From the NCBI GenBank assembly GCA_001179505.1, contig CDMY01000571.1, positions 1-64,000 of the forward strand: a DNA stretch of 64,000 bases, in the 5' to 3' direction. Made by a program: the position numbers and the translations under genes. Numbering within the stretch: position 1 is the stretch's first letter; each line of letters begins with the position of its first letter. This document shows positions 6,600 through 50,270 of this stretch, in pieces. The notes under the pieces were generated by a model. It was not told the origin of the DNA. It saw nothing but the letters and a program-made list of their open reading frames with translations, and did not search any database. The DNA comes from Vitrella brassicaformis CCMP3155 (taxonomy: Eukaryota > Protista > Chromerida).

Positions 6600-9500
6600 T
6601 TCCATCCGTCGTATGTAGATACGTGTTGTCTGTCTGCACGGTGGGTGGACCGATGGATGGAGGGATGAGAGGACACATCTTCATTCATTTGGAAAGGTGT
6701 GTTCACTTACTGACTGAAGGTCGGCGACTTGAGAGTGCGATAGTACGCAATGCAACAACGCATATGGACATCCATCCATCCATCCATCCATCAGTCAGTG
6801 CTGTCTGTCTGTCTGTCTGGCCAGGCCATGCCTTGCCATCCAGCTATCGATAATTAAATCGATCGCCACACCACATCAGTCACGTCACACCATATCTCAT
6901 GTCATGTCATTTCGACACACACTCACTCCAAATAGCACGCGCAGGTAGGTAGGTAGGTGGTAGAAGGAGAGACACACCCACCACCAGGCCCACAACTCAT
7001 CATCTGAAATGCCTGCCTCTCTGTCTGTGTCCTTATCTGCTTCCTTGCGTCAATCAGAGCCTCCCTGCCTGCCTGCATGCCTCGTAGTATGGCGAATTGC
7101 CCGCTCGCTCACTCACCCCTCCACCAAACCACTCAGTCTTTCATTCATTGATTCATTTGGAAGACCCGACACGACCAAATCACCCCCTCCCCTCCCCTCC
7201 CTGGACTGACATACTGACGTACTGCGCAAGACCGACAAACGAACCAATAGAGTGTGTGTGTGTGTGTGTGGCGAGCGAACCAATAAGGTATATGGGTGTG
7301 TGAGTGCGAATGGGGAGACGAAGGGCATCTGGTTCCTCTCTCTCTCCTTCCGTCTCGCTCGCTCTCTGTCTGTCTGTCTTGTCTGTCCGGCCCGATGGGC
7401 TCCTCTGCTCCCTCCTTGGCCCAGGCCGCCAACGCCCCGCCCCCACTCATGTCATGCCCGCGAACACGCGGTAACTAGTATATACTTGACACACTCGCAC
7501 GCACACGCACACGCACGCGACACACGCCATGCAATCGATCAGATACAACACAACACGCATACAGAAACAAACGTGCTCCTCTCACTCCACTCCCCGCCGC
7601 CCGCTCCATCCATCCAGCCATTCTGTGCACACCACGTCATCGCAGGCAGGTCAGCTGAGAGCGGGACACTTACTGCACTGACCGAATCGATCATATCCTC
7701 CACACGAAAAAAGCACACAGACAGACGTACGCAGCCTACATCCATCCATCCATTTGTTTGTTTGGTAGGTATACCCCTCATTGATTTCATTGGCACGCAC
7801 CACAACCCCCCACCACCCCGTCCCGCCCCTTTGGCCCCCAGATGGATGGATGGATGCATCAGCAGCCATCGTCAGCAGCAGCACCCCACCAGCACCAGCA
7901 CCGCCAGCCGACCAAAATCACTACAGCAGCAGCGAGGCGAGGCAGAAGGAAGACACACACACACACACACGGGCAGGCAGGCACGGAGGCAGGCGGGCGG
8001 GCCAGCAGCTGTCTGTCAATCGACGAACGAACCAAGAGCCCTGAGGGGGAGCGACGAATTATCCTTTTCTCTCTGTGTGTGTTAGGAACTAGCGGGCCAA
8101 AATTGCTTGACGCATAGTTAGTAGTAGTCGCTTGCTGGCAGGGAGGGAGGGAGGGAGGGGGAGGGAGAAGGAGGGAGGGGGCGAGACACATCCATCCATC
8201 CAGCGCTGCAGGCGTGGCGCGACGTTGACAGAGCTACCGCCACACCACCCACTTCCCCCGCCCCCACACGTACTCATTCATGCACTCAATACTGTATAAA
8301 AAACACCGCAAGCCAAGCCACGGGCGTTTTAGCCCGCCTATCACCAACCAACCAACCAACCAACCAAAGAGAGAGAGTCACTCATGTGAGTGAGTGAGAG
8401 AGTCAGACCAGACCAGGGGCCTCACCGACCGACCGACCGACCGACCGACAGACCAACCAACCAAGAGGCCTCCCTCCCGCCGCATTTATGCCCCTGCCGC
8501 CTCGCCTTGCCGCTGCATTGATTCGTCCATTCAATCCATCCTGCCTGCCATCCATCCATCAGTCAGGCCATAGTTAGTGCCAAAAATGTGGGCAGTGGTT
8601 AGATGAGGGCGTGTGTACGTATGGTGGTCAATTGTGCGTGCGGTGGGGCCTCTCGAGGCGTGCCACAGCCAGGCAGTCAGTCGGACGGCCGCACCGCACC
8701 CCACCCGTCCCATATATCCCATGCCATCCCCCCAAGCCATTCACTCACTCCACCACCGACCCGCCCCCCCACACACGTATAGAAAGAGAGAGAGCAGTGG
8801 CACGAAAGACAGAAGTAAGTAATCAGGGAGAGAGTAAGCAGCACCCACACACCATACACACACGGTACACCCACTCACCATCCGTCCCGTCACCCACCCG
8901 TCAGCCGTCCGCAAGCCGGCAGGCACCCCACCCACAGGAGGTGAGGCATGGCATCAGAGAGAGGGAACGCGGGCCTGTGCAAGGCAGACCCGCCTTAATT
9001 ATTAAAATGTGCCTCGAGCGGATCTGATCGCTCTCCTCGTCTCTGTCGCTTGGGTGTCCTTGTCTGTCTTGTCCATCATCGTATCATCGACCCTCTACAC
9101 ACATGACTGACACGACTGACTGACAGACACCCTTCGCACTCGAAGCACGTCCAACGACTACTTACTGACACCCACCACCCCACAGTCTGCCTGCCTGCCT
9201 GCCTGCCCGGCTCTCCTCTCCCCCTCCCAATGCACCCATAGACACACTTATATACTTCCGCCGCCCCGCCCCGCCCCACCCTGCCCCATCCGGCCCCACC
9301 ACACACACACTTGCCGAACTGCCATGCCGCCGCACCGATGCGCGTATGTAGGATAAAGAGAGAGACAAAGAGAAAGAGAGGCCGAGGGAGAGCATGGCAT
9401 GCAACTAGGGACAACCTTTTATCGGAGACAGTTTGGTCTCCTCTGTGTGCTGGCTGTCTAGTGCACGCAAACATACACACATACACACATACAGAAATAC

Positions 9501-10090
9501 ACACATGCACCGTACACACGCACAAGTAGGCAGGCAGGCGGGCCGGCAAACGAACAAGATATTCCACGCGCGGCCGCTCCGTTTGGTGCGTAGACTCGAC
9601 GCACTCGCTGCGATAGACGCAATCAATGTAGCTTAGCTGGCTGGAGTGATAGCATAAATGCCTGCCTGCATGCGATCGTATGTATGTATGTGTGTACGTA
9701 TGTGTGTGTATGTGTATATATGTATCCATTTTATACAGACGTACGTGCAGGTGTATGTCAGTGGCTGGCTCGGCTGGCTGCTTGGCGGGGAGTGGGTGGG
9801 TGAGGTGACTGAGTGACTGAGTCAGTGGGGGGGTGAGAAAGCGGTTCGACCGACCGACCGACCGACCGACCGACAGGCAGACAGACAGGCAGACAGGCAG
9901 ACGCACATGACATAAATGTATGTATGTCTGTCTGTACGTACGTATTTTGCATGCTAGACAGACAGACAGGCAGGCAGCTGGACTGGACGGATGATACACA
10001 CCCCTTACGTTAGCCACACCACACCACACACACACTCACACTCACACTCACACACACAGCACCACACCAACCAACCACAGCCCCCATTCA
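6600..10090. repeat. Microsatellite-rich convergent intergenic/UTR region: (CA)n, (GGAT)n, (CCGA)n, (GTCT)n, (GGGA)n
   Basis: Directly visible arrays, e.g. (CCGA)n at about 8425-8447 and 9848-9873. No convincing coding exon chain. Confidence 0.8.
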
Positions 10091-10095
10091 TTTAC

Positions 10096-13000
10096 TCACA
10101 CAGTAAGTATCCCCCCTCCCATTATCCCTCCCGCCACAACATGGGGCGCCACGCCCCTCAGATGACCGTCGTCGCACAGCCAGCCACCAACCGTCCTCCG
10201 GATGCACACATCTGGGGGGCACACAGACAGACGCACACAAGTACGGTGGGTGACGCTTGACGCTTGCCGTGCTGCCTGCCTTAATTGCCGCCTGGCTGGC
10301 TGGCTGGCTGGCTGACCTTCAGCGATTGCGTTGAGTAGTGCGGGTGTGGCGACCAGCCTGGGGCTGCCCTCTATCGGCCACGGCCCCAACCGACGAGCCT
10401 CACCACACTGCACACAGCACAGCACAGCACATGCCGGAAACGATACACACACCGATAGGCATCGCATCATAGCATCAATGGCTGTGCGGTGCTGTCTCCT
10501 CACCAGCAGTAGGTTGAGCCCCCATGCTCTTGCGAGGGGCTCTTCGGTCTCCGCCGGCGGCACAGGATGGTGGGCGGGGTGTGTATGTGTATGTGTGTGG
10601 TGTGTGTGGCCGCTGCCGCTCTCGACGGACGGCGCCTCTCGCCCCACACAGCCATCGGTCGCCCCGCCTGCCGGCACGTCTGACGTGTGTGCAGGGGCCC
10701 TCCGGTGATGGCCCACCACGATCTCGACCTTGACTGAATGGAGCACACACAGTCCCACACGGTGCAAGGATGGATCTCGTCTGTGTGCTGTTCGCACCCC
10801 CCCACCTTGTGTGTGGCAGAGGTGTGGCCCCTCGAGGGCCTCACAGACGCACCGACACGGCCACTCCCACCGCACCGGCACACGCGTCACCGCCCCGTCC
10901 TGCACCGCCTCACGCACGCGACGCGCCAGGCCGACAGGGTCGACGGGCAGCAGCACGGGCAGGTGGGCCCATGTGGAGTGGCTCTCCAGCTGGCTCACGC
11001 GGATGGACCTCAGGAGGTTGAAGGCCACCATGCTCTGGCACATGGGGGGCGACGGAGAGGGCGCTGCGGGAGGGGTCTTGGCCACCATGCCTAGCCTTAC
11101 AAGGCTCGAGAGGTAGTCCTCGGCTGACTGGCTGCCAGTGCACCTCTCCCTCTCCCTCACACCGGCCTTGCTGCTGCTGGTACTGGTAGGGGTCTTCTTT
11201 GCCGAGAGCGCCCGGAGCCGGCTCTGTTCGACATAGGCGTAGCACTGCAGCTCCTCTGGGAGAGAGAGCGCCCCACAAGGCAGCAGGGGCCCGTACTCGC
11301 TCTGCGCCGGGTGGTCCCTGACGACAGGCAGACCGGCCCCTGCCTGGCCCCCTTGCTGACCCTGGTCCCTGTTGGGCCCCACTCCTATGTCAGATGACAT
11401 GCTGTCGGTGGTGGGCTGGTGGTACGACACGCCCTGTGAGGGGGCGGGGAAGGGGCTCTCCTCCGTCTCGTTCTCGGTGTCCATGCCGAGGTCGGTCTCC
11501 ACGTCGATGACCTCCATGTCGCCGTCACCTGGCTTCAAGTCTTTCCGACCCGACAGGGCCCTCTCGCCGGTCGGCCCGCTGCCCTTGTGGGTGTGCACCA
11601 CGACGAGCGGCGCGGGACGCCTGTCGTCGCTCCGGCTGCGGCTGCCCCGGCTGTTGTGCCCGCTTCCGCCTGTGGTGCTGGTGCCCTCGCTGCTGGTGGT
11701 GGCGGTGGTGCCTCCTGACTTGGCCGTGCTGACCTTCTCGTCGCCCTCCTCCTCACTGCCGTCCACTCCCGCGCCCCGCCTGACCTTCTTGAGGGTGGTG
11801 CCGTGGTGGAGGTCAGAGTGGGTGATGCTGTTGCGGCCGCACTGGAAGAGGCCGCACAGCATGCCCAGCAGCCGCTGGGAGAAGGGGCGGGGGCTGGGGG
11901 GATGGTGGGCCTTGGGGATGGGGCACGGCGCTGTCGCCGCCTTCTTGTTGATGGGCAGCGTCGGAGGCGACACCACCTTGCTGTAGACCTCACCGGACGA
12001 CGGCTTGTCCCTTGTCGACGGGGGGAGGCCATTCAGCTGCCCGTCGACGGATGGCGGATGCACCCCCATGGGTATGGGGGAGTTAGCCGCCACAACGGAC
12101 GATTTGGCCTCTTCTCCTCTGCCCGCTGCTGTCGGGCTGCCGACGATGCCATGCTCCGTACGCTGTGGGTCCTTGATGGCCTCGCTCGGCAGGTAGGGCG
12201 GGACTTCATTGGGCAGACATGACGGCACTGTGGGGGTGGAGATGAGAAGGGGCAGGGCGTCGGGGGAGATGGGCCACCGGTGTGTGGCGGGCTGGTCACC
12301 GTGACAGCCTCTTTCACCCAATCTCCTGCCGCTGCGCCGGCGGCTCGGTGACTGCGGCGACTGTGTGGAGGAGTGCTGCAAGGCCTGCGGGCGGGTCGGG
12401 GGCGACTCATCGGGCTTCTTGACTTGGGGGATGGTCATGGTGATCCAGCTGTAGGCCAGCAGCAGGGCCTCGATGGCCGACGCCGGGGCAGCCAGCTGCT
12501 TCCTTTGCAGAGACTCGATCAGCTGGGACTGTGACAGCCACTCGGCGCCGCCAGACGATGTCGCCACGCGGTAGGACGCCTGCACACAACACCACACCCA
12601 ACACACACAGACAGTGACTTTGGTGCGAGACGGCGGGAGGCGAGACGAATCGCTACTGACCGCTGTGGGCCTCAGGGTGTCAGTGCCGACGAGAGCCCGA
12701 ATGGCGAGCCCCGCCGCAGGCCCCACGGCATGCATCTCCAGCTCCCGGCTCTCGCCAGCCCCACTCCGACTGGCCACCCACACGGCCGTCAGGTCGTCAT
12801 CGGGCGCGCTGCTGGTGGTGCTGGCCGCGCCACTCAGCACGGGCCCCACCCTCCTGCTGCCGTTGCCGTGATCGCCGTCCTTGTGGGCCACCGCAGAGGT
12901 GATTGGCGTACACACCGGTGTGTTTGAGCTGGTGTGTGTGGAGCCCTTGGACACCATGGCGGCGATGGGCCGCTCCAAGATCTCCATCAGGGTGGCGTTG

Positions 13001-16000
13001 GACGGTGAGTGGACGTCCAGCGTGAAGGATGCGTTGGGGGCCGTGACGTGGCGCGCCTGTGTGTCGGGTGTCGGTGCTGCTGCAGGGGCCGGGGCGGCGG
13101 GTGGTTGGGGTGTTGTTTGTGGTGGTGGTGGTGGTGGTTGCCGCTGATTGGCTGCTGCTGCTCCGTGGCTGGGAGAGCTGCCGCGGCTGCCCTTGCGCTC
13201 CTGATGACAAACAAGACACAGATACACACGCATGAAGGTCTTCCTTGCTCTCCATCAATGGTCCTGCCTGCCTGTGACACACCCACCATGAGTTTCTCCT
13301 CGATGAATTTCTCGGCCGACAGTGCGATGGCCATTCCCACATCGCCATCCATCCCGTCGCCGCCCGCCGAGGACGCGGCACACGACGCCTGCTCGCCGAC
13401 CCTCCACACTGTACGGCCCGCCTCAGCCTGTCCCTGCCCCTGCCCCTGCCGAGACATCGCCGAAACACCGGGCGAGTAGGTGTGATGGGTGTAGAAGCTC
13501 ACGAAGAATCCCGACTGCCGGTCATCGAGGCCCATCGACACCTCCTCGCCCACACGAGCGAACTGGACGAGAGAGAAGCCCGGGACGGTCTGCATGGCGG
13601 CGAGGAGCCGCTTGACGACGCTACTAAGGCGCATGGCCGAGCAGCTGAGGGGGTACTGCAGCTTGACGTGCATGCCTTCTTGGGCTGCTGGCGGGGGAGA
13701 GCTGCCCGTACTGGTGTTGGTGCTGGTGCTGGCGGCCGCCACCTGAAGCCTTGGAAGCAACGGGTGAGAGGGCGGCAACAGGCTGGCGAACTGGGGCACC
13801 ACCCACTGTTCCCCTGGCCGAGACACATCCCGCCCTCCGACGCTGCCGCGAGGGGCGACAAAGACGCTCGAGAGGGGCACCACGACGCCCGCATTGATGA
13901 GGTCGGTGAGGGGCCCGCGGAACCCGGTGGGCGATGATGATGACGAGTGGTCGCTGCCACCCAGACATCGCAGGAGGGGCCGTGTGGACACCACCCCTGA
14001 GTGTGTGGGGGCCAGGTAGCTCTGGCTGGACGTCAGGACCCGCACAGGGCCGATCAGCGTGGCGGGGTTGTAGCAAGGGGGAGCCGTGGGCACCATGTGG
14101 TGGGTCGTGTAGGGCTGCTCCTCGCTGGAGCTGCCTCGCAGGACCGTCACGACCTGCTTGATGAGCACGGCCTCCTTGTCCTTGGTCCGCCTGGTCTTGC
14201 CAGGTGTGCCGTTGTGAGAAGAGACCACCTCGCCCAGCTCGGCGAAGTTGCCCTGCCACACCTCCAGCGAGTTGCCGCCCACCTTGTTCAGAAAAGGGGA
14301 GGGCGGGCTGTGTGTTGACGGCGCAGCGGGCGGAGCGGGTGTCTGTGAGGGGTCGACAGGCGACGGCATCGTGGTGACCCGGGGAGTGGCCGACTCGCGT
14401 CTGGTGTTGCGGACCACCACCACCTGGGCCCCGTGTCGGCCGGGCGCCACTCGGTCGCAGACCATGCGTACATAGTCGTCTCCTCCATCTGTGTCGCCAT
14501 CGAGCACCACAATCACCACCACCCGACCACACGCCTCCCGCCGCAGCCGGAACGAGTGGTCGAAGGGCCATGCCGGCGCATCCCCCGAGTGCCCATCCTC
14601 CTTGTGGTGCGACGGCTGCACGTAGGGGGCTGTGCTCGCGTCGGCTGTCTGGAAGAGGATGGGGCCCATGACGGGTATGAAGTCGCAGAAGGCGGGGCAG
14701 TCAATGACGGTGACGTTGACGGCCTTGGTGTTGGTGCTCGGGTGGTTGGTGTGCCTGTTGCCGCCGTGGCAGGTGGGTTTGCGGTGGAAGAGGGACGTGT
14801 GGAAGCGAGGGTGGTGGATGGCCTCCTCGGACAAACGGACATGATGCACCTTCACCCCGCCCTCAAGGTGGGCCTCTGTGTGGGTGTCTGGGTAACCACC
14901 CTCGCGGCTGGTGGTGGCGGTGCCCTTGCCGTCGATGCCATGCAGGTTGTCGACCAGCCACTTGGCCACTGTGGACTTGCCCACACGTGGCGGGCCCACC
15001 ACAATGAAGCGAGCGCTCGCCCCACCACCAGCACCCAATGCGGCGTGCCGGTGTGTCTGTGGAGGTCCCCGGTGTCCCTCTGCGTCCCGCTGCTGGTACG
15101 ACTTGGGGGTGAGTCCGAAGCTGCCCGTCACCACAGTGTCCCGCAGCGGGGGCAGCTCCAAGTTGCTGCTGCTGCTGGATGTCTTGTTTCTCTCCCTGCT
15201 GCTGCTGTTGGTGCCGTGCGGGTGGCGGTGCGTGGTTGCGGTAGTGGCGGCGGCGTTTGTGTCGCGGGGGAAGTGGGAATGGTGGTGGTGCTCACGCAGA
15301 GGAGAGCAGCCGTCCAGCAGGCTCAGCCGGCCCTGCTGCCGCAGCTGCCGCAACGCCTCCAACACCTGAATGAACAGAGAGAGAAAGTTGGTCAGGTGCA
15401 CCCCCCCATCATCATCAAATCAAGCTTGCTGAGCTCTTTTGTTTGTGTGAGCTGAGGTGTGTGCTGTGTTGCTCCCTCCCTCACGATGTCTTTGTAGTTT
15501 TGCTGTTCCCTCTGCTCCCTCAGGTAGGTGTGCATGGTCTCATGACACATAAGGTGCCGGTCATTCAGCACCGCCAGGCACTCCATCAGGCCCGCAAACC
15601 GCTGCTCATCGAGCGCCTGATACAGATCCACAGCTGCGGACGACGGCACGTTCGCGGCTCCCTTGATGCTGCCGCTGCTGGCCTTGGCCCGCTCGAAGCC
15701 GAATGACCGTTGCAGCATGAGCATGGCTGCCGAGAGGTCGACATTGAGAGGGCAGTCGGGCCGCGGTGTCTTGATGACGTGACAGAAGGGCGACAGGAGG
15801 GATGCCGCGACGGTTCGGAAGAGTGGCGGGCGGAGGAGCCCGATGTCGGGGTGCCGGAGGCCGCCCACGCCCTCGTCGGCCGTGCCCTTGAAGCCGCCCT
15901 TCATCTCCCACCCCAGCCTGACACACAGGAGAGAGACATCCCATCACTCTCGACAGCTGGCTGGTGCGATGTGTGGTGTTGCTGTGTCGTTCGTTTGTGT

Positions 16001-19000
16001 ACGTACCTGTAGCTGGCTGTGGGTGTGGGCGTGGGCATCTCGCCGAATATGGGGTCGACCGAGACCTGCATGGGCGGGGAGATGCTCCTGTTCCTTACGT
16101 CGCCCGGCATCCCGTGCTCCCCACCACCACCGCCGCCGCCGCCAACGGGGCGGTCCGGCCCGTTGATGAAGTGCTCATAGAGCTGGGGCGAGTTGAGCAG
16201 CGCCACGGGGTTGCTGCTGTTGGTGTTGTATGCGCCAGGGGCGGACACAGCCGTGGAGGTGTAGGAAGCCGTCCACTGGGGCGCGTCTGGCCGGAGGTTG
16301 GTCACGTTGGAGTAGGGGCTGCGAGGCGGGCTGGGGTCCTCCAGGATGGCCGGCAGCGCACGTATCGCATCCAGCACAGCCTGAGTCGTCACGTGCGCCA
16401 CGTCAACCGACCGCTCGCTGCCGCGTGCCGTGGGGGAGGATGCTGCCCCTGCTGTGGCCCGCCTGGGCACAGATGCCAGCAGCGGCCCGTTGGGTGCGCT
16501 TTGGTGTGCGGTGGTGAGCGAAGCCACGCCCAGTGCCTGCGGGACGTCGATGAAGGGTGCCTCCTGCAGGAGACAGGCCGCCACGTCGAATGCCCCCACC
16601 CTCACCGCCGCTTTCAGCGGCCGGAATGACAGGTCCGTGGCCGTCAGCGCCGCACCGCCTCCTCCTGCCCCTGCCCCTCCGCTGATGGGCTGTCTGTCGG
16701 GTGAGGGTGTCTGTGTCTGTGTGGACCCCTGCTTGGGTTTGAGGGCGGCGCGCAGGGGGGGTACGATGGGGTCGGCGCCGCAGTTGAGGAGCAGGGACAC
16801 CAGGGGCCGACTTTGCGACATGATGGCGAAGGCCAGAGGGGAGTAACCCATGCGGTCCTGTTTGTTTCAACACGCGGTCACACACAGAAGGAATGCAGGT
16901 TTGCAGGGTGGGTGCGTGACGGGGAGTGTTGCTGGCGTGATTTCTGTCTGCTCTGCCCGCCTGACTGACTGACCCTTTGGTTGAGTTTGACGGCGTCTGT
17001 GCCGTTTGTCTGCAGGAGGTGGGCGGCGATCTGGGCCGCACCACTCAGACACGCCCAGTGGAGACTCGTACGGCCGAACGAATCTGCACATCAGAACGTC
17101 AGACACACCGACATGAGTAAGACATATATCGATAAGCGCCGCGTGTTCGTTGCAGGGGTGTATGGGAGGGAGTGAGCGAGACAGACACGTACCTGTACCG
17201 CCGGGCTTAGCGCCCTTTCGAATTAGGTAGCGCACGAGCTTGAGGTTGATGGCCTCAGAGTTGCAGAAACTCCCGCGCGCCGCCCACATCAACAGAGTCA
17301 TCCCACACGCGTCACGCAGCGTACCCACCGCCAAACCCTGCACACACACACACACACACACGCGCACGCGCCCCAATATACCTTGACGTATAGCAGGCAT
17401 CGCATCATTCATTTTGTGATACGTACCGGTATGTGCTGTTCGAACGCCTCGATGACGGGCGTGATGCCGGCCCATGCGGCGAGCGACAAGACAGTCAGCC
17501 GCAGCGGGGGATCGCCGCCATTGCCACATCCACCACCAGCAGCAGCCTCAGTAGCAGGTGAGCACGGGGAGCCGTCGGCAGCAGCCGCCCCTGAGGCTGG
17601 CGCTGCCGTCGGGATGGCCTGACCACCCAAGTCAGCCGCCAACAGCTGACGCGTCACCTGCACACACATAGTTGGTGCACACGCGACAGGAAGGTCACTT
17701 CTGTCTGTCTCTGTGTGGTTTGTTTGTGCAGTCAGTGTGCTGTGGTGTCCTCACTCACCGCTCCGCAGAAGGTGTACAGCTCCGTGACGAGGGTCCTGGC
17801 AGCGACGTCCGTGCTGCCTCTCGAATTGAGGACCTGCTGGAAGGACGCCGCCAGCTGGCCGAAGCCACCGAGCCCAAGCAGCCCCTCGTCTCTAGACACA
17901 CCACTCTCTTCGCCCCCGTCCGCACCCGCCCCCGCCCCCCTGGCTCTCCGCTGCTTCTGCAATGGCGAGGGCAGGTAGCAGTCCATGAGCACCCGTCGGG
18001 CCCACGACACCGTCAGCAGCACCAGCAGCGTCACGGGACACCGCTCCGCACTGGCCTCCGCGGGCCCCTTGCGTGTCGACTCCTCCATATTCCGCCCGGC
18101 CCTCGGGGTGCCCGGTGTCTTTGAACGACCGCCGGCGTTGTAGCGGTAGAGCTTCGGCACCGCACTGCCCGCCACTCGAGGGATCAGAGGCCCCTCGCCG
18201 CCCAGCGCGCTAATGCTCACGTTGGCCGACTCGGGCCCTTCGTCTGAGCCCCCCGCCTCGGACATGATGTCGTCATGTCCTGGTGAAGGTGGGCAGCTGG
18301 GGGACCGCTGGCTCATGGGGTCCAGCAGGGGACTGGAAGGGTTCAGGTGGGTGGACGGGAGGCCCACGGCCACACAGCCCCGCCGCCGGCTCTCCAGGGT
18401 GTCCATCAAGGCCAGCTGCGTCATCAGCTGCCGCAGGGGCGAGGCGGCTGCCATCTGGTGGGTAGAGGAGGATGACCCAAGGTGCAGCTGGTCTGCGGCC
18501 TGCGGCAGGGGTCGTAGCCTGGTGCCCCTGTGCTTGTTGTGGGAGCTCTCGTGTGCAGCATTCGATGTGTCCTCCATGACGGCCCCCGTGGCTGCGGCGA
18601 GGAGCGTGGCAAACGAGAAGACCAGTGGGGTGGCGGACGGCTTGGCGGTCTCCCAGATGAGCGGCAGGTCGCACATCGATGCGAAGCTGCGAAGGTCGAA
18701 CAGCCCCGACAGCCAGCCGTCGAAGTCGTGAGCCGTGAGGGTGACGGCCACCTCCAGGCTGGGCAGGAAGATCGGGCGCATCAGTGCCCTCCCGCCCTCA
18801 ATCTCCAGCCGCAGGTCGGTGGCCCGCAGCTGCTGCTGCAGAAAGGCCGACAGCTCCACGGCCTGCTCACCTTCATCGTCATGCTTGTGTGCGGGCGGGG
18901 GCAGGAGGGCCAGACAGGTGGTGGGCAGGATGCAGTTGACCCGCAGAGGGGACCACATGCCGCCCCTCAGCGTCTTCCACAGCAGGTCGGGCAGCGATGA

Positions 19001-22000
19001 GCAAGGAACGCTGGGGGGCGCCCCGCCGTTGGGCGTCTCGTAGGCGTGTCTGAGCTCCTGCAGGCCCAGGCTCATGAGCCACAAGGCCACCTGGTGCGTG
19101 CCGTCAGGGTGGACGGGCACCAGCAGGCGCTCCCCCAGGAGGGCGTGGAGGTACCCTTCCCACGGGTAGCAGTTCCATGAGGACCCCGGCGTCATCAGCA
19201 GCTGCAGATAGGCGAACACCAAGCCATCCAGCTCCGCCACCGGGATGCTCACAGGCCCGTCGGGCGGGCCCGCCACAGACCCCACTGGCGAGTGGCCGCT
19301 CAGCCACGCGCCGTCACTGCGGGCCACATGGCAGGTCAGCCTCACTGCCGGCACGCCGCCCACCGACACCTCGGCGCCCGCCCGGCTGCCGCTGCCGCTG
19401 CTGCACTGGGACAGCACCGGGACGAACCTTCCGGTGGCTGCCGAGAAGGTCCGTAGGTCGTGGTAGGGGTCGGGCTGCTGCGGGGAGGGCGGGGGGATGG
19501 TCATGCCGTCGCACTCCATGACGAACGACGAGCAGTACTCTGCGGGGGTGTCGGTGATGCGGAGGTGCAGCGGGGAGAAGACCTCGAGGGCCAGGGTGGC
19601 CTCGCTGCCCGCCACTGACGGAAAGAGTACCGCCGCGCCCTGCGCCAGGGAGGCGTTCTTGGCGTCGTCTGTGTGTGCGGTGTCGGTGTGTGTGGTGGAT
19701 GGCGGGTGGTATGGGGGCGGCGGGCGGGGCAGCCTGTGCCGCCATCTGAGTCCGGCGGCGAAGAGGAGGTCCCACTTGACCATGAAGATGACGTTGTGTG
19801 GCGGGGGAGCCGGGGGGGAGTTGAAGATGTGCTGGTAGTTCTCGTGCAGGTGGTAGATCTCCTCCTGCGTCAGCAGCCGAGGGCCCGCACCGGGGTTGCG
19901 ACCCACAGACTTGGGGCTACCCGGCAGGCGAAGCGACCACGATTCCCTGCGCACACAAATACAACACAAAAAAAAGGCGAACAGACAGACCATGAGTGGG
20001 CGCGTGTTTGTGTGTCGAGCGAGACGGTGGCGAGCTGACCGACCCAGTGCCGTCTTTGCTTGAGGGGCTGGAGAGCGCCGCGTTATTGAGTTGCATCTCC
20101 ATCCTCAGCTCGATGTGCGCCATCAGCCGCCACAGCAAGATCTGCTCGGGCCGGTACTCCAACTCTATGTCTGCAAGCCATCCATCCATCCATCCAACCA
20201 ACACACAGAGCGCGGTTTCCGTCTTGTTCCTCTGCTGTGTTGTGTGGAAAGGCTGCTTGTCAGCTGTCTGACCTGTGAGAATGTGTTGTGCGACTCGGTC
20301 GATGGGTGGGAAGTTGCGCCTCCAGCTGCAGATTGACTCAGGCCCGTCGAACTTGCGCTTGTACACCGCTATGTACCGCTTGCAGTGAATCCGCATCGCC
20401 AGACCCTCGCGCAACCTGCACACCACACCATACACACACAAGGCCGTCTGGAGGTCTGTCTGTCTCCCTTTGCCAGGCAGGTTCTTCTGCTCGCTCAGCT
20501 CACGTGATGGGCGCCCTCCGTAGGTATCGCTGCAGCCTGAAGAACTCCCGCACCCGCCGCCACCTAAGCTTGCTGCTGCTGAGGTTGAGGGGGTTGTCCT
20601 GCGGGTGGTAGAAGTGGTGGCACCCCTCCATGGCTGGCATGAGGGGCTGGCTGAAGGCCATGGGGCCGCCGGGAGGGAGGATGCCGCTCTGGTGGTGGTG
20701 GTGGTAGTGGTGCGGCTGCTGGTGGTCGTGGAGGTGTCTGGTGGGCACGGGGGGTGAGAAGGAGGGCCGTGAAGGGGTGTGAGTGTGTGGAGGGGGGAAG
20801 TGGGTGTTGTGTGAGGGGAAGGACACGTGGTGGGGGAGGGCCGTGTACGGGCTGTCGGCCTCGTTGGGGTACAGCGAGCTGCGGCCGTGCAGGTAGTGCC
20901 ACAACTGGAAACTCGACATCCTGAACCACCCCAAGCGACCGACATACACACAATGTGCCATGCCACCCTGATCATGCTTCTGTCCGCCCGCCCGCCTGCC
21001 TCCATGTCTGTCTGTCTGTCTGTCTGCCCTTCCTCGCTCACCTTTGTTCCAGGAAACGGATGGCCTTGAGGACCTCCTGATTGGTCGAGAGGTCGACGGG
21101 CAGCCTCGCCAGCACGGGCGGGCAGGTAAAACCGTCGGGACAGCCGCCTCCCTGCCCCTCCTGCGACTGTGCAGCCGGCCACACGCCGTAGAAGCTGTTC
21201 CTGCTGCCCTGGGTGGCCGCAGGGAGGACCGGCGCAGAAGTGTCGGGCTGCACCCGGAAGGAGAGGTTGACGCTGTTGTACTCTAGGTCCCTGTCGGCCT
21301 CCTTGGCGCGTCCCTCGCGCACGTGTGGGTTGGCGGGGTATGCAGGGGGCGGGGGGCGGTCCTTGGCCATGTGGGCGGGGATGGTGTTGAGCTGGGCGTG
21401 CAGCTGCACCCACAACGGCAGCACCATCACTGCCGGCCGCCGGTCGAACGTCGCCCGCCGACTGGATGCGTTCCTCATGGGGTCCTCCTCTGCATCGACG
21501 CAGCCGAGGTGACATGGCAGGAGGGGAGGGGGGAGGGAGGGGGAGGGGCTGCCGGGGCGGTTGGAGTTGGCAGGGGGCTGCGTGAAGGGTCGCTGGGCAA
21601 GTGACTGACCCTCGGGCCAGTCCGTGTGGAACAGCGACACTATCTCGGACGCCTCAATGGCGGCGAAGATCTGACAGCCACGCCATACACACAACCATCA
21701 TACACAGGCAGATTGATGAGGCCGGTCCGGTGGTAAGCCAACAGGGGTTGTTGTGTGTGTCGATTCGGTTCAGTGTTTGGTTTACATACCCCGTTGGGTT
21801 CCTGTGCGGTAGCTTCGTAGAGCGACCAGGGCACGTACAGCGGGCACATGTGGTGGAAATGGAGACTCACGCCACGCAGCTCCAGCTTCTCACCAAACAC
21901 TTTCCAGCCCTCACCCTCGGGGTCCTCACTCCCCTCCTCCACACCACCAGAACCGCCCAGCCGCACAATACGCCCGCGCTGGTGGCCCCGAGGCTCGCGG

Positions 22001-22971
22001 GAGAACTTTGGCACCTGAGGGCAACATTCACGCCACGCAACCAGCAGCACGTCAAGCCCTTTTTCTTTGCGTGTCTGTGTGGTGTGTGTGGGTTGGTGTG
22101 TGGCTCACGATGAGGTGTTCGGCGGGAGCTGTGGGTGCGAGGTAGGCCGACTCGATGACGAGCCCGAAGGCAAAGGAGGAACCCTTGACATCGACATCAT
22201 CGCACTGCAGTCGAGAACACACACCACACACGACAAACAGCAAAGGAGAGACGGCCGTTGTGAGGCGACCCTTGGCAGTGCTCCCCTGTCTGTCCGCTTC
22301 TCTGTGGTTCGCTACTGACCTCTAGTCGAATGTGTGCCCGGGTGAGCTTGAGTGAGAGTTTGCTGAAGTAGTCCCTGAAGGCGTTGCGGATGACCTCCAT
22401 CTCTGCACTACCACACCCGTCGGCGGCCCTGTTGGTGGCGTCCGAGCGCCCGCCCCTGGTCTGGAGCAGCTCCAGCTGGCTGATCTCCTGGCTGCGGTGC
22501 GTGGATGTCTCGCTCCGGCCCAGCACCTGACACGTCGGCGCCACCACGGCATACAGCCCGTCGATGGCCACCTCCACATGGCCCGTGACAATCGACGTCA
22601 CGCGGAACGACAGCGACGACACGAAGCCGGCCTTGAGCGTCAGGGGGAGGCTGCACTGCAGGAAGAACTTGTTCACCGGCTCCGGCTTGAACGCCAAGTC
22701 CCTGAAGGAAGCAAGGAAACCACACACCACACACCACGACACACACAAAAGGCACAACACACCACCCACAGGTAGCGGTGCCAAACAGAGAGAGTCCCGG
22801 TGAAAACAGCCGTGTCGGTCGGTCAGTGCGGCAAAGGTTTTGTGTGTGTGTTTTGCTATGTCACCTGAGTGTGACTTGTCCGGCGAGTAGGCTGATTTTG
22901 AGCTGGTCGGAGCTGAAGCCATAGAGGAAGGCATCCAGCTGCGTCCGGATGGTATCCAGCAGCTTGTCCAT
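10096..22971 (-). CDS. Giant multi-exon protein (about 20 exons, roughly 3,600 aa): Chorein-N/VPS13-like N-terminus, ankyrin repeats, Roc-COR-like P-loop domain, low-complexity C-terminus
   Basis: The N-terminus reads MDKLLDTIRTQLDAFLYGFSSDQLKISLLAGQVTLRDLAFKPEPVNKFFLQCSLPLTLKAGFVSSLSFRV...VEVAIDGLYAVVAP (Chorein-N pattern). Ankyrin repeats include GMTLLMWAARG, DSFGRTSLHWACLSG and DRMGYSPLAFAIMS. The P-loop is GPPRVGKST (14970-14996). GT-AG junctions checked from 22971 to about 13200 all keep frame. Downstream introns are only partly checked and the 3' end is uncertain. Confidence 0.75.
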
Positions 22972-23391
22972 CCTCGGCCACTCAAGTCACACAGCTACGC
23001 GGTGGGCGAGGCCAGAGAGGCTGCACGCGGCATCACAGCGCCAGCGCAGAGGAAAGCCACGCAAGGCAGGCCGCTCGTGTGATCTGGCCAGCAGGGAACT
23101 GGAAAGCGGTCCTACCGACAAAGGGCCGTATCTGACTTGCTCTCTCTGTATGTTGGACACCAGTTGTGGAACAACGTGCTTTTGTTTCGTGCGGGCTGAG
23201 CTTGCAGATTTGAGCTCGCATCAAACGCCGGGCTCCCCCTCGTGCTGAAGGGTAGCCTTTAGGCCCTTGACAGTACTGGAGTACTGCAGTGGTTGACTCC
23301 CTGTGCCGCCCGACATGCAAACTGGGGGCGTCTCCAAACGCCAGGGAGCTGCGTGGCTCAGTCTTGCGTGTGCGTGGAGGTGTGACTCACA

Positions 23392-26300
23392 ATGAGCCAC
23401 TCCCCTACCCGCCCATCTCTCGCACGGGTCGGCAGCCGACGCACAGCGACCAGCATAGACCACAATTGACGGCTTGTGTTGCGTTGTGTGTCAGGTTGGG
23501 ACAGCGTCCTCTGCAGACGAGGGAGGGCAGCAGCCGACGATGCTGTCGCCGACCGCTGCGGCGCGTGTCACACCGTCGAGCCGGCGGTCCAGCAAACTGG
23601 ACCGCAGCTCCACAAAGAAACTTGCCATGGTACGAGTGCACCCAGTCTCGCGCCAATCAGCGGTGTCTTCCATGTGTGTGTACGTCTGTCTGTCGCCTGG
23701 CTGCAGATGATAGAGAAGGAAGACGATGAAATGGTGTCTGTCATGCGGCGGCGGCAGGTATTGTTTGCAATGGGACTCCGTGTGTTGTGTGTGTGTGTGC
23801 GTGTGCGTATGTGTGGCGCGGGTCCATTTGTCTGGGCCTTTCCGTGTGTGTGCCAACAGAGCATGTTCCAGAGCCAGATCCAGGAGCTCGAGGAGACGCT
23901 CGCTGAGAGGGACGACGAGATCGAGCGGCTGCAGGTGGGCAGCAAGAGAGAGACAAGCAGCACTGCTTCACCCGATGGATGGCTGCGTGCAGGGGAGGAC
24001 TCGTGAGTTGGAGGAGAATGGTGCGGCGCTCGAGGACAGGAACGGGCAGCTGGAGGAGAGTCGGCAGGACTGGGAGGACAAGGCGCGGGCCTGGGAGGAC
24101 AAGTGCCACGAGTGGGAGGGCAAGAGCCACCAGTGGGAGAAGAACAGCAACGAATGGGAACGGAAGAGCGGAGACTTCCAAGCCAAGTGGCAGAACACCG
24201 AGGCCAAGTGGCACGCGGCCGAGGAGCGCGCACACTCGCTGGAGGAAAAGCTTCACGAGGCAGAGGTAGCTGAGCTGCATGGAACATCACACACACGCAC
24301 CAGGTCCCCCTCCCTCCCTCCCTCCCTGCCTGCGGGTGGCATGAATGAATAATGACCATCTATGTATGTGTGCAGGACGAGCGTGACAGCCTGCGTCGGA
24401 AGTTGGGCGAGAAGGATGGCCAGTTCAGCGAGGAGAGGAAGCAGCGGGTGGCGTGTGAGGACAGGCTGGAGGAGGCGCAGAGCCAGCTGCAGGAGAAGAC
24501 GCTGCAGATCCAGAGCCTCGAGGGCAAGCTGTTGCGCGCTACGGAGGCGGGATCGCAGCACCAGCGTACCCACGAGGAGGACATGCAGCGGATGCACGAA
24601 ACACACGACAAACAGGCACAGGAAATACAAAAGGTGTGGTCTGGTGTGGTGTGGTGTGGTGTGTCGGTGCCCACACACAAAGGAGGAGACACATGCTGGC
24701 GTGCAGCCCACGTCCTACTATCATCTCTTTCTCCCTCTGTGACTCCTCGTCTGTCTGTCTCAGGGTCGTGAGGCGTGCACCAAGCTGTCCATAGAGGTTC
24801 AGAACCTTGCTGTGCGCATGCGTGAGACGGAGGAGAAGCACGTGGCGGAGATCCGCCGCTTGGAGGGGCTGCTTGACCAGGCGCACCAGGACCTTGAGAA
24901 GGAGCGTCACTCCAACACGGCCCTCATCAGCAGTCAGGAGGAGCTGCGCCAGAGCATGTGGGACGAGAAGCGGAAGGACACAGAGGAGAAGCAGACACTC
25001 AAGGCGCAGCTGACCATGAAGGCCGAGGAGGACAAGGAAAGCGTCAAGCAGCAGATGGAGGCAAAGCTCAACACCACGGTGGACGAGTTCCAGCAGGAGA
25101 GGATGCGCCTCAATGACCAGATCACTCAGCTCCGCAACGACCTGGCCATGGAGCGACAGCGGTGCATATCACTCGACGAGGCACGGGAGACGCTTGAACG
25201 AGGTCAGACTCCACTTCCAGTGCATCCCGGCTGAACACACATGACATGCGGACGTCTCTCTTTTCGGTCGCTCAGATTTGAGTGGTGAGCGGCGCCGTGG
25301 TGCCTCGCTTGACGAGTTGGTGGCCAACCTGCGCAGCACACTCGACCAGCTCACCCGTGAGAAGCAGGACATCGAGGCCAGCGTTGTGGCATCGCATCAG
25401 AAACTGAACACCACTGAAGCACAGTTCAAGGGTAACTAAGGCACGGAAGGAGAAATGACAGACAGCCACATCATGACATGCCTCAAGCGCACCCCTTCTG
25501 CTGATTGCCTCACGTGTGCAGACGCCCAGCGCCGCCACTCATTGGAGCTGGAGCGCATCCATCAGCAGCAGGCACAGACGCTGAGGTCGTCTGCCGACGA
25601 CAACCACAAGCGTCTCACACAAATGGGGCAGGAGCACGCCACACAAGTGAGTAGGGGACTTGGTTCTGCCTTCGCTCTCGACGACTTGGCTGTGGACGAG
25701 CTCTTTGGTCAGATCGACGACTTGAGAAGCCACCACGCGGCCGACTTGAAGAAGGTGCTGGAGGAGTACGAGGTGGCGGTGCAGAACGTGCGGCTGGAGA
25801 GCGACAGGCAGATGTCCGCCGTGCAGAAGCAGCACAGCAAGGAGATCGACGAAATCACCGCGGCACACCACAGCGCACTGCAGGACATGCGCAACGAAAT
25901 GAGCCGGCTGCAGAACGTGAGATAAACACCACAGCAGGGAGGGAGGGTGGCTCAAGGTGACTATTGTAAGTTGTGTGTGGTTGGGGCGTAGGAGTTGTAT
26001 GACGAGCGCCAGCGGCATCAGCTGCGACTGGAGGCCGAGGCTTTGGAATATCGGCGAAAGGTGGGCGTTCCCTAACATGCTCACCACTCATGAAGCCATC
26101 CATGTGTGTCAGGATGAGGAGACGAATGAGCTCATCGGCAAGCTCAAGCACATGGAAACCAAGATCTTGCCCGACATGAAGAAGAAACTTGAGGTAAGTC
26201 GCCGACCTCCCTCGTGCTATCGACCTACCTGTGTCGTCTTGCTGCTCGTACGTTGCAGGAGACGGGCATCGAGGCCATGTCAGTGCGGCAGCAGCTCGAG

Positions 26301-50200: not shown

Positions 50201-50270
50201 AGGCCAGACCGCCTACGACCGTCCCGACATCTCATCTCGCGTGTTCTATGAGAAGCAGAAGGCGCTGCTT
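47202..50270 (+). CDS. Helitron OTU-linker-Rep spliced ORF, copy 3 (5' end in gap, 3' truncated)
   Basis: Four GT-AG introns (about 47889, 48602, 49499 and 50115) each keep frame from the OTU C-terminus through the Zn-binding motif into Rep motif 1. Homology stops after RVFYEKQKALL. Confidence 0.75.

What the first reader, a model, noticed from the sequence alone, without database searches (positions are those of the whole stretch)
10096..22971. One giant gene appears to fuse a VPS13/Chorein-N lipid-bridge cap with ankyrin repeats and a Roc-COR-like GTPase
Seen in sequence: the ORF track splits this region into many pieces, but consecutive GT-AG junctions from the ATG at 22971 to about 13200 all keep frame. 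They link Chorein-N (22971 to about 22530), a region of about 1,400 aa I cannot assign, at least 4 ankyrin repeats (about 16600-17500) and a P-loop domain with Roc-like strand order (about 14400-15030), followed by a COR-like region. Established knowledge: Chorein-N caps bridge-like lipid transfer proteins (VPS13, ATG2, BLTP3), and Roco proteins (LRRK2, DAPK1) pair Roc-COR with ankyrin or LRR domains. LRRK2 and VPS13C act sequentially at damaged lysosomes in mammals. Inference: I know of no described protein carrying both modules, so this could be a GTPase-gated lipid-transfer or membrane-tethering protein.
Basis: partly seen in the sequence, partly recalled or inferred. Interest (0 to 1): 0.85.

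Follow-up and report, generated by a model that had tools for sequence, protein, structure and literature searches.

The report
Giant VPS13-cap, ankyrin, P-loop gene
This alga (Vitrella brassicaformis) really does make one giant 3,637-residue protein that starts like the lipid-bridge protein VPS13 and also carries ankyrin repeats and a nucleotide-binding loop, but no test here could show that the loop belongs to an LRRK2-type (Roc-COR) switch, and no relative of the protein turned up in any other organism.

Summary
The gene is real, single and expressed. The public model CEM23551.1 / A0A0G4G5B5 (Vitrella brassicaformis, "unnamed protein product", 3,637 aa) maps exactly onto the minus strand as 20 exons, from the ATG at 22971 to the stop at 10096. 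All 19 introns are GT-AG and 72-163 nt long. Spliced contigs from two runs reproduce ten of the eleven introns in the 6 kb I could lay.

Chorein-N is confirmed: Pfam VPS13_N covers aa 12-187 at E 4.8e-12, and human VPS13A matches at E 0.0017. Ankyrin repeats are confirmed (E 1e-18; about 5 repeats).

The P-loop is real, but "Roc-COR" is not supported:
- Pfam gave no Roc or COR-A/B hit on the whole protein or on 20 sub-pieces.
- The PDB sequence search gave no such hit.
- Two single-sequence AlphaFold models were unusable (pLDDT 36 and 39).
- The only support is a weak language-model neighbourhood (0.85) and motif resemblances that I read by eye.

Nothing shows that RBG groove repeats follow the cap, and VPS13's C-terminal modules are absent. 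phmmer of the P-loop exon against 1.84 billion proteins found only this protein, so it is a lineage-restricted orphan. I found no paper describing this architecture.

Verdict: a genuine, undescribed domain combination. The "GTPase-gated lipid bridge" reading remains speculation. Interest is moderate.

The parts
10096..22971 (-). Whole gene, ATG to stop: 20 exons and 19 GT-AG introns (72-163 nt), encoding 3,637 aa (CEM23551.1 / A0A0G4G5B5). Exons (high-low): 22971-22865, 22701-22320, 22204-22109, 22014-21790, 21670-21042, 20920-20504, 20415-20273, 20170-20044, 19946-17759, 17657-17427, 17337-17193, 17083-16974, 16857-16007, 15917-15485, 15365-13287, 13200-12661, 12579-10806, 10733-10504, 10407-10317, 10211-10096.
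   Evidence: Exact mapping of P0001 onto the window. Protein identity. Splicing.
22972..23156 (-). Approximate 5' UTR. Inferred from the 292 letters of the 1,120-nt spliced contig that lie upstream of exon 2; 107 of them are exon 1.
   Evidence: table 8 (X4 record 2). An in-frame TGA lies 6 codons upstream of the ATG. The upper end is an estimate.
22109..22971 (-). Exons 1-3, aa 1-195: Chorein-N / first VPS13-like unit at the extreme N-terminus.
   Evidence: Pfam VPS13_N PF12624, aa 12-187 against profile positions 14-189 of 1317: E 4.8e-12, 44.9 bits, below the cut-off of 80. ATG2 model E 6e-7. Human VPS13A 9yg4_B, aa 5-185, E 0.0017.
17514..22014 (-). aa 196-1486: unassigned, insert-rich region with Pro-, His- and Ser-rich tracts. 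It may continue the VPS13-like beta-groove; this is not shown.
   Evidence: No Pfam hit in four sub-pieces. A language-model search of aa 1-1438 returned VPS13/ATG2/BLTP3 clusters at 0.93 with 179-182 shared features. My own test for beta-type amphipathic periodicity gave z = 2.0 for aa 710-1180, against 2.5 for the Chorein-N control. Exons 5-10 are confirmed by spliced contigs.
16543..17513 (-). aa 1487-1705: ankyrin-repeat block. Three canonical repeats (aa 1520-1632) plus a degenerate flanking repeat on each side, the last after a Gly/Pro-rich insert.
   Evidence: Pfam Ank_2 E 1.3e-18 on the whole protein and 1.1e-22 on aa 1500-1700; also Ank_3, Ank and Ank_4. Repeat register read.
14130..15014 (-). 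aa 2146-2440: divergent P-loop NTPase domain with four low-complexity inserts. Walker A GPPRVGKS lies at 14996-14973. A G3-like DCPA lies at 14702-14691. The strand RVVVIVVLDG lies at 14525-14496. A G4-like NTRR lies at 14408-14397.
   Evidence: Pfam gives only Walker-A-level hits (AAA_22, AAA_18, MMR_HSR1, nSTAND3; E 0.005-0.3) and GTP_EFTU at E 0.007 across G1-G3. NCBIfam gives EF-G at E 0.07. There is no Roc hit. phmmer against 1.84e9 proteins finds only this protein. Coordinates.
It is probably helical. Its family is unassigned.
   Evidence: No Pfam COR-A or COR-B hit in six sub-pieces. No PDB hit. The language-model search of aa 2425-2900 alone gave no usable hit. The alpha-type amphipathic signal is z = 3.3. 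The COR-like motifs are read by eye only.
10096..13200 (-). aa 2722-3637 plus the stop codon: C-terminal tail, largely low-complexity, with no recognisable domain. Its four annotated introns are multiples of 3 without stops and were not tested with reads.
   Evidence: Pfam found nothing. Composition. Intron phases.

Best explanation
This is one expressed, lineage-restricted gene of Vitrella brassicaformis encoding a 3,637-aa mosaic protein.

Shown here:
- A VPS13-type Chorein-N / first groove unit at the very N-terminus.
- About 5 ankyrin repeats in the middle.
- A highly divergent P-loop NTPase at about aa 2146-2440.
- Long low-complexity inserts and a disordered tail.
- None of VPS13's C-terminal modules (VAB, ATG_C, PH).

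Inferred:
- The protein works as a membrane-contact or lipid-handling scaffold.
- The chorein end engages a donor membrane and lipids, by analogy with VPS13, ATG2 and BLTP3, where this cap is the lipid entry at the ER side.
- aa 196 to about 1180 may extend the groove with diverged beta-strands broken by disordered loops, as reported for Plasmodium VPS13-like proteins.
- The ankyrin block and the NTPase take the place of VPS13's adaptor-binding end. They would supply partner binding and a nucleotide-dependent conformational or dimerisation switch.
- The order of motifs (G1; a beta-hairpin; hhhhDxxA followed by an aromatic; A-x-G-hhhhhh-D; hhhh-x-N) looks Ras-like to me, so a Roc-type origin is possible. 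G3 lacks the Gly and G4 lacks Lys and Asp, so I expect slow, non-guanine-specific or purely structural nucleotide binding rather than a classical GTPase cycle.
For: Gene model and expression.

Chorein-N: Pfam E 4.8e-12 and the ATG2 model E 6e-7; VPS13A E 0.0017; language-model neighbours VPS13/ATG2/BLTP3 at 0.93 with 179-182 shared features.

Ankyrin.

P-loop: Walker A hits. The G1-G3 stretch aligns to GTP_EFTU at E 0.007 and to EF-G at E 0.07. All top language-model neighbours of aa 2120-2721 are Roc/COR clusters, but at only 0.85-0.78. Both AlphaFold runs give the same order of secondary-structure elements, with a run of strands directly after helix 1, although confidence is low.

Context: Plasmodium has six VPS13-like proteins, and two of them were found only by structure prediction (PMC13036008).
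Against: - No profile match beyond aa 187 to any RBG family, so a groove is not shown.
- The VPS13_N score of 44.9 is below Pfam's cut-off of 80.
- No Roc, COR or any other family-level assignment exists for the NTPase.
- After about 30 sub-piece queries, the GTP_EFTU E-value of 0.007 is not significant.
- The AlphaFold models are unusable (pLDDT 36 and 39), and the fold searches returned unrelated folds.
- No orthologue was found anywhere, so conservation cannot argue for function.
- G3 and G4 are degenerate.
Confidence: 0.5

Rival explanations
1. One reading: aa 2146-2721 is a true Roc-COR tandem. The protein would then be a Roco family member fused to a bridge-like lipid transfer protein, that is, a GTPase-gated lipid bridge or tether.
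For: All ten best language-model neighbours of aa 2120-2721 carry Roc, COR-A or COR-B. Ankyrin repeats lie N-terminal to the G domain, as in LRRK2 and DAPK1 (established knowledge). By eye, and from my memory of Roco sequences, I see Ras-like beta2, G3 and beta4 patterns. I also see four COR-like motifs in the right order: LTDLINAGVVV at aa 2514, EQWVVPQFASLL at aa 2547, KLQYPLS...VKRLL at aa 2594-2619, and FARVG / VWRVG at about aa 2630 and 2681 (for positions). The region after the domain is amphipathic-helical.
Against: Pfam found no Roc (PF08477), COR-A (PF16095) or COR-B (PF25497) on the whole protein or on 20 sub-pieces at E up to 10. No hit came from the five P-loop/COR-region queries against the PDB sequence set, a 2026 copy of all entries. 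The language-model score is below the tool's 0.9 line, with 147 shared features against the 170 typical of true members. The tool states that a third of shuffled proteins also get ten concordant hits. The COR candidate queried alone gave nothing. G4 has no Asp. No RBG repeats are shown.
Confidence: 0.25
2. The P-loop domain is an ASCE-type ATPase (STAND/NACHT-like or AAA-like). On this reading VVLDGDTD is Walker B and VVVVRNTR is sensor 1, and the gene encodes an NLR-like ankyrin-NTPase scaffold that happens to carry a chorein cap.
For: The Walker A form GPPxxGKST is typical of AAA, STAND and nucleotide kinases. The best P-loop hits are AAA_22, AAA_18, NTPase_1 and nSTAND3 and adenylate kinases. 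The hhhhDG.D motif followed by hhhh.x.TR about 30 aa later resembles NACHT / NB-ARC kinase-2 and RNBS-B (from memory).
Against: All those hits cover only 20-30 residues around Walker A. Walker A and the proposed Walker B would be 159 aa apart. Both models place a run of beta-strands right after helix 1, which suits TRAFAC GTPases better, though confidence is low. No STAND family reached its threshold. The language-model neighbours are Roc/COR, not NACHT.
Confidence: 0.15
3. An evolutionary chimera without a lipid-transfer role. A young or fast-evolving Vitrella-specific gene picked up the 5' exons of a VPS13-like gene. The chorein piece would serve at most as a membrane-binding cap, and the degenerate P-loop would be a relic.
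For: No homologue of the P-loop exon exists in 1.84e9 proteins, and the other searches found none either. Only the first 190 of 1317 VPS13_N positions match. G3 and G4 are degenerate. More than half of the protein is low-complexity. Earlier notes of this scan describe other species-specific fusions in this genome.
Against: The gene is transcribed and precisely spliced in two studies. A 10.9-kb reading frame with GC3 of 0.82 is maintained. The chorein part is not a recent copy of another gene: no similar protein of 2,000-6,365 aa shared words with it. The language-model signal over aa 1-1438 is strong.
Confidence: 0.25
4. Two or more neighbouring genes wrongly merged by the gene predictor.
For: No single RNA contig bridges 21467-21544. 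Introns 12-19 were not tested with reads.
Against: The untested gap lies inside one exon with an open frame. The contigs on either side have the same depth in both runs: 49 against 55.6 in X4, and 7.07 against 7.68 in X5. One 4,754-nt contig joins exon 5 to exon 12 and, by its length, reaches about exon 14. All introns are 163 nt or shorter, which leaves no room for an intergenic region.
Confidence: 0.03

Closest known systems
VPS13 / ATG2 / BLTP3 (bridge-like lipid transfer proteins, RBG superfamily)
   Same: A Chorein-N-type N-terminus starts at residue 1 and aligns to VPS13_N positions 14-189 and to human VPS13A residues 8-184. The protein is very large and has disordered inserts, like the VPS13-like proteins of myzozoans.
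   Different: No profile match after aa 187. No VAB, ATG_C or PH modules. Instead it carries ankyrin repeats and a P-loop NTPase, and neither word occurs in the text of Levine's survey of RBG proteins and their accessory domains.
Roco proteins (LRRK2, LRRK1, DAPK1, MFHAS1, bacterial and Dictyostelium Rocos)
   Same: Ankyrin repeats lie upstream of a P-loop domain whose motif order looks Ras-like, followed by a helical region. The language-model neighbours are Roc/COR clusters.
   Different: No Roc or COR profile hit. G3 is DxxA and G4 is NTRR. There is a linker of about 440 aa between the ankyrin block and the P-loop. No LRR, kinase or death domain. No Roco protein is known with a chorein cap.
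STAND NTPases with ankyrin repeats (NACHT-ANK, NB-ARC type)
   Same: A GPPxxGKST Walker A, a possible hhhhDG.D Walker B, and a giant multidomain context with repeats.
   Different: The repeats lie N-terminal rather than C-terminal. Motif spacing is far too long. No family model reaches its threshold.

Membership tests
RBG / VPS13-like bridge lipid transfer proteins | Chorein-N domain at the extreme N-terminus | tested here: met
   Pfam PF12624, aa 12-187, E 4.8e-12. VPS13A 9yg4_B E 0.0017. The start codon is preceded by an in-frame stop. Exons 1-5 are joined in RNA contigs.
RBG / VPS13-like bridge lipid transfer proteins | Score above Pfam's curated cut-off for VPS13_N (80 bits; the model spans 1317 positions) | tested here: not met
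   44.9 bits. Only profile positions 14-189 match.
RBG / VPS13-like bridge lipid transfer proteins | A series of repeating beta-groove units forming a long hydrophobic groove | tested here: inconclusive
   No Pfam hit on aa 188-1438. Language-model neighbours are VPS13/ATG2/BLTP3 at 0.93. The beta-amphipathic signal is weak, z = 2.0.
VPS13 proper | C-terminal VAB repeats, ATG_C helices and a PH domain | tested here: not met
   No such Pfam family on the whole protein or on the C-terminal pieces.
Roco (Roc-COR) | Roc G-domain recognised by profile (PF08477 / Ras clan) | tested here: not met
   No hit at E up to 10 on the whole protein or on the sub-pieces covering the domain. No PDB GTPase hit.
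Roco (Roc-COR) | COR-A and COR-B directly after Roc | tested here: not met
   No PF16095 or PF25497 hit in six sub-pieces. No PDB hit. The language-model search of aa 2425-2900 was blank. Resemblance is by eye only.
Roco (Roc-COR) | Canonical G1, G3 (DxxG) and G4 ([NT]KxD) motifs | tested here: inconclusive
   G1 is present (GPPRVGKS). G3 reads DCPA. G4 reads NTRR, without Lys or Asp. Some Roc domains have variant G4 motifs, from my own knowledge.
Roco (Roc-COR) | Ras-like fold followed by the COR fold | tested here: inconclusive
   Single-sequence AlphaFold gave pLDDT 35.6 and 39.2. Foldseek and VIA-align matches were unrelated folds. No homologues exist from which to build an alignment.
Ankyrin-repeat proteins | Tandem 33-residue ankyrin repeats above the Pfam threshold | tested here: met
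   Ank_2 67.8 bits (cut-off 27.3), Ank_3 40 bits, Ank 37.5 bits.
STAND / AAA-type ATPases | A family profile covering Walker A, Walker B and sensor 1 | tested here: not met
   nSTAND3, AAA, AAA_22 and AAA_18 match only 20-30 residues around Walker A, all below their cut-offs.

The most novel reading that the evidence does not exclude
This would be the first bridge-like lipid transfer protein with a built-in nucleotide switch. A VPS13-like groove (aa 1 to about 1200) would be coupled in one chain to an ankyrin plus Roc-COR-like GTPase that dimerises or changes shape with nucleotide state. That would gate tethering or lipid flow at a chromerid membrane contact site.
Probability: 0.12. Interest if true: 0.8.

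Novelty: new variant of a known kind. Interest (0 to 1): 0.45.

Why it matters
Bridge-like lipid transfer proteins are thought to be controlled by separate adaptors and small GTPases. No RBG protein has been described with its own NTPase or with ankyrin repeats. A natural fusion would give a direct handle on how lipid bridges are switched on. It would also add to the unusually rich and divergent VPS13-like repertoire of the apicomplexan lineage, where such proteins build the inner membrane complex. Against that, the protein is so far confined to one alga. Its NTPase motifs are degenerate, and neither the groove nor the Roc-COR identity is shown. For now it is a well-documented curiosity and a good target for structure prediction, not a demonstrated mechanism.

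Tried and rejected
1. Homologue searches all returned only the protein itself:
- phmmer of the P-loop exon against 1.84e9 representatives;
- word-indexed searches with region 1-300, region 1-200 and aa 1-1438;
- two metagenome scans.
No alignment could therefore be built for profile searches or for AlphaFold.

2. Single-sequence AlphaFold of aa 2120-2900 and aa 2140-2445 gave pLDDT 35.6 and 39.2. Foldseek and VIA-align on them gave unrelated folds, such as PolG2 and spermine synthase. I discarded these as meaningless.

3. Pfam on raw exons, on the whole protein and on 20 sub-pieces, and NCBIfam on 5 pieces, gave nothing beyond Chorein-N, ankyrin and Walker A.

4. PDB sequence searches on six pieces gave only VPS13A, His-tag artefacts, low-complexity matches and adenylate-kinase P-loops.

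5. My own dynamic-programming gene finder reproduced 12 of the 20 annotated exons exactly. It skipped the first ankyrin exon (annotated exon 10, 17657-17427) and invented two introns inside the P-loop exon, so I dropped it in favour of the exact mapping.

6. A self-BLAST for internal repeats found none.

7. An insert-trimmed G-domain query would be the obvious way to help HMMER. It has no reference and would have had to be typed, so I left it out.

8. The two-gene artefact was considered and rejected on the RNA contigs.

Full report
**What is there**

The window is GC-rich eukaryotic DNA. Earlier notes of this scan call the genome Vitrella-type. My searches confirm this: the protein encoded here is CEM23551.1 / UniProt A0A0G4G5B5 of Vitrella brassicaformis CCMP3155. 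It is an "unnamed protein product" of 3,637 aa on a 331.7-kb contig.

An exact spliced mapping places it on the minus strand as 20 exons, from the ATG at 22971 to the stop at 10096. All 19 introns are GT-AG, 72-163 nt long, and have consensus donors and acceptors. The ATG is preceded by an in-frame TGA six codons upstream. The CDS has 67 % GC (GC3 82 %) against 55 % in the introns.

**Is it one transcript?**

I could lay reads once, on 6 kb, and chose 17001-23000 (Chorein-N to the first ankyrin repeats). Runs X4 and X5 come from different studies and hold spliced contigs.
- Joints at the annotated sites remove introns 1, 2, 3, 4, 6, 8 and 11 in both runs. Intron 9 is removed in X4 only.
- The contig pieces also skip introns 5 and 7.
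- X6 comes from the same sample as X4 and holds unspliced contigs. The skips are therefore splicing, not deletions in the genome.
- One 1,120-nt contig carries the 5' UTR and exons 1 to 5.
- One 4,754-nt contig runs from exon 5 through exon 12 and, by its length, on to about exon 14.
- The two contigs leave 78 nt uncovered (21467-21544), inside the Pro/Ser-rich part of exon 5. Depth is the same on both sides in both runs.

With introns no longer than 163 nt there is no room for an intergenic region. I put the two-gene artefact at about 3 %. Intron 10 fell in a repeat the tool skipped. Introns 12-19 lie outside the stretch laid. Introns 16-19 are multiples of three without stops, so sequence alone cannot tell them from retained coding sequence.

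**Domains that hold up**

On the spliced protein, Pfam gives VPS13_N (PF12624) for aa 12-187 against profile positions 14-189 of 1317, at E 4.8e-12. The ATG2 model also matches the same stretch.

The score of 44.9 bits is below the curated 80 because only the cap and first unit of that long model match. Human VPS13A (9yg4_B, residues 8-184) matches at E 0.0017.

Ankyrin repeats are clear: Ank_2 at 67.8 bits, with three canonical repeats at aa 1520-1632 and a degenerate repeat on each side.

A Walker A motif (GPPRVGKS) sits at aa 2152-2159.

**The Roc-COR claim**

This is where the reading fails its own test. Pfam finds no Roc, COR-A or COR-B on the whole protein or on 20 overlapping sub-pieces at E up to 10.
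- Around the P-loop there are only 20-30-residue Walker-A hits to AAA, STAND, kinase and GTPase models.
- One longer alignment runs from G1 to G3 against GTP_EFTU (E 0.007) and EF-G (E 0.07). It is driven by the DCPA motif resembling DxPG. After about 30 queries it is not significant.
- The five P-loop/COR-region queries against the PDB sequence set return only adenylate-kinase P-loops and low-complexity noise.
- phmmer of the whole 810-residue exon translation against 1.84 billion representative proteins finds this protein and nothing else. No alignment could be built.
- Both single-sequence AlphaFold jobs were unusable (mean pLDDT 35.6 and 39.2). The fold searches on them returned unrelated folds.

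In favour of Roc-COR there are three things. First, all top language-model neighbours of aa 2120-2721 are Roc/COR-A/COR-B clusters. Their scores are 0.85-0.78 with 147 shared features, which the tool itself rates as a lead only. The COR candidate queried alone gave nothing.

Second, both poor models repeat the same order of elements, with several strands straight after helix 1, as in TRAFAC GTPases.

Third, I compared the sequence by eye with motifs recalled from memory. These include a Ras-like beta2, hhhhDxxA with an aromatic at +7, an A-x-G-hhhhhh-D strand like Rab's YYRGAxGhhhVYD, and hhhh-x-N in place of NKxD. There are also four COR-like motifs in the right order (positions).

These are leads, not tests. 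G3 lacks the glycine and G4 lacks Lys and Asp, so even a Ras-like domain here would be an atypical nucleotide binder. I put true Roc-COR homology at about 25 %. A STAND/AAA-type reading (VVLDGDTD as Walker B, RNTR as sensor 1) gets about 15 %. The rest is unassigned.

**Is it a lipid bridge?**

The cap is there, but nothing after aa 187 matches any RBG model. VPS13's VAB, ATG_C and PH modules are absent.

There is indirect support for more groove. Language-model neighbours of aa 1-1438 are VPS13/ATG2/BLTP3 clusters at 0.93 with 179-182 shared features. My own beta-amphipathic periodicity test is mildly positive for aa 710-1180 (z = 2.0, against 2.5 for the chorein control).

In Plasmodium, two of the six VPS13-like proteins were found only by structure prediction, and disordered inserts disturbed the models (PMC13036008). 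A hidden groove is therefore plausible, but it is not shown.

**Comparison with what is known, and novelty**

The text of Levine's survey of RBG proteins and their accessory domains contains neither 'ankyrin' nor 'GTPase'. The only paper in the library that holds both "chorein" and "Roco" is a Parkinson's disease review that treats separate genes. A search on chorein plus ankyrin gave nothing relevant.

The sequence itself has been public since the 2015 genome, with Chorein_N and Ank listed as precomputed Pfam domains. Nobody appears to have described it.

No orthologue turned up in any collection I could search. As far as I can see the gene is Vitrella-specific. Earlier notes of this scan report other species-specific fusions in this genome.

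**Verdict**

I class it as a new variant of a known kind.

The headline interpretation, a Roc-COR GTPase gating a lipid bridge, is not supported by any profile or fold result. It rests on weak leads: probability about 0.12 for the full claim, with interest 0.8 if true. Overall interest is 0.45.

The decisive work is HHpred or AF3 on aa 2140-2900 and aa 1-1450, a long-read cDNA, and searches of chromerid and colpodellid data.

Noticed in passing
window 21467-21544 (inside exon 5): RNA-derived contigs of two independent runs both break in this Pro/Ser-rich stretch, and a loose end at 21443 in X5 leads into unrelated sequence. This is probably a low-complexity repeat shared with other loci that splits the assembly graph, rather than a transcript end.
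   Followed up: partly
window 10212-10316, 10408-10503, 10734-10805, 12580-12660 (annotated introns 19, 18, 17, 16): The last four annotated introns are all multiples of 3 and contain no in-frame stop. They could equally be retained coding sequence. Intron 7 is also a multiple of 3 and stop-free, but spliced contigs confirm it.
   Followed up: partly
window 17333-17376, 20166-20212, 20683-20736 and several intron ends: Several introns end in (TG)n tracts just before the AG acceptor, and the read-laying tool skipped three repeat-like stretches. CA/TG-rich tracts also flank the gene (9500-10000 and 23400-24000).
   Followed up: no
window 17557, 17921, 18825-18840, 19386-19404, 22458: Extra loose ends of RNA contigs lie inside exons 2, 9 and 10, and four of them recur in both runs. 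They could be assembly chimeras at repeats or minor alternative isoforms. I did not resolve which.
   Followed up: no
window 47202-50270: Another first-stage note on this window (s1-201897) flags an intron-containing Helitron with an OTU-like protease spliced to Rep. I did not examine it.
   Followed up: no
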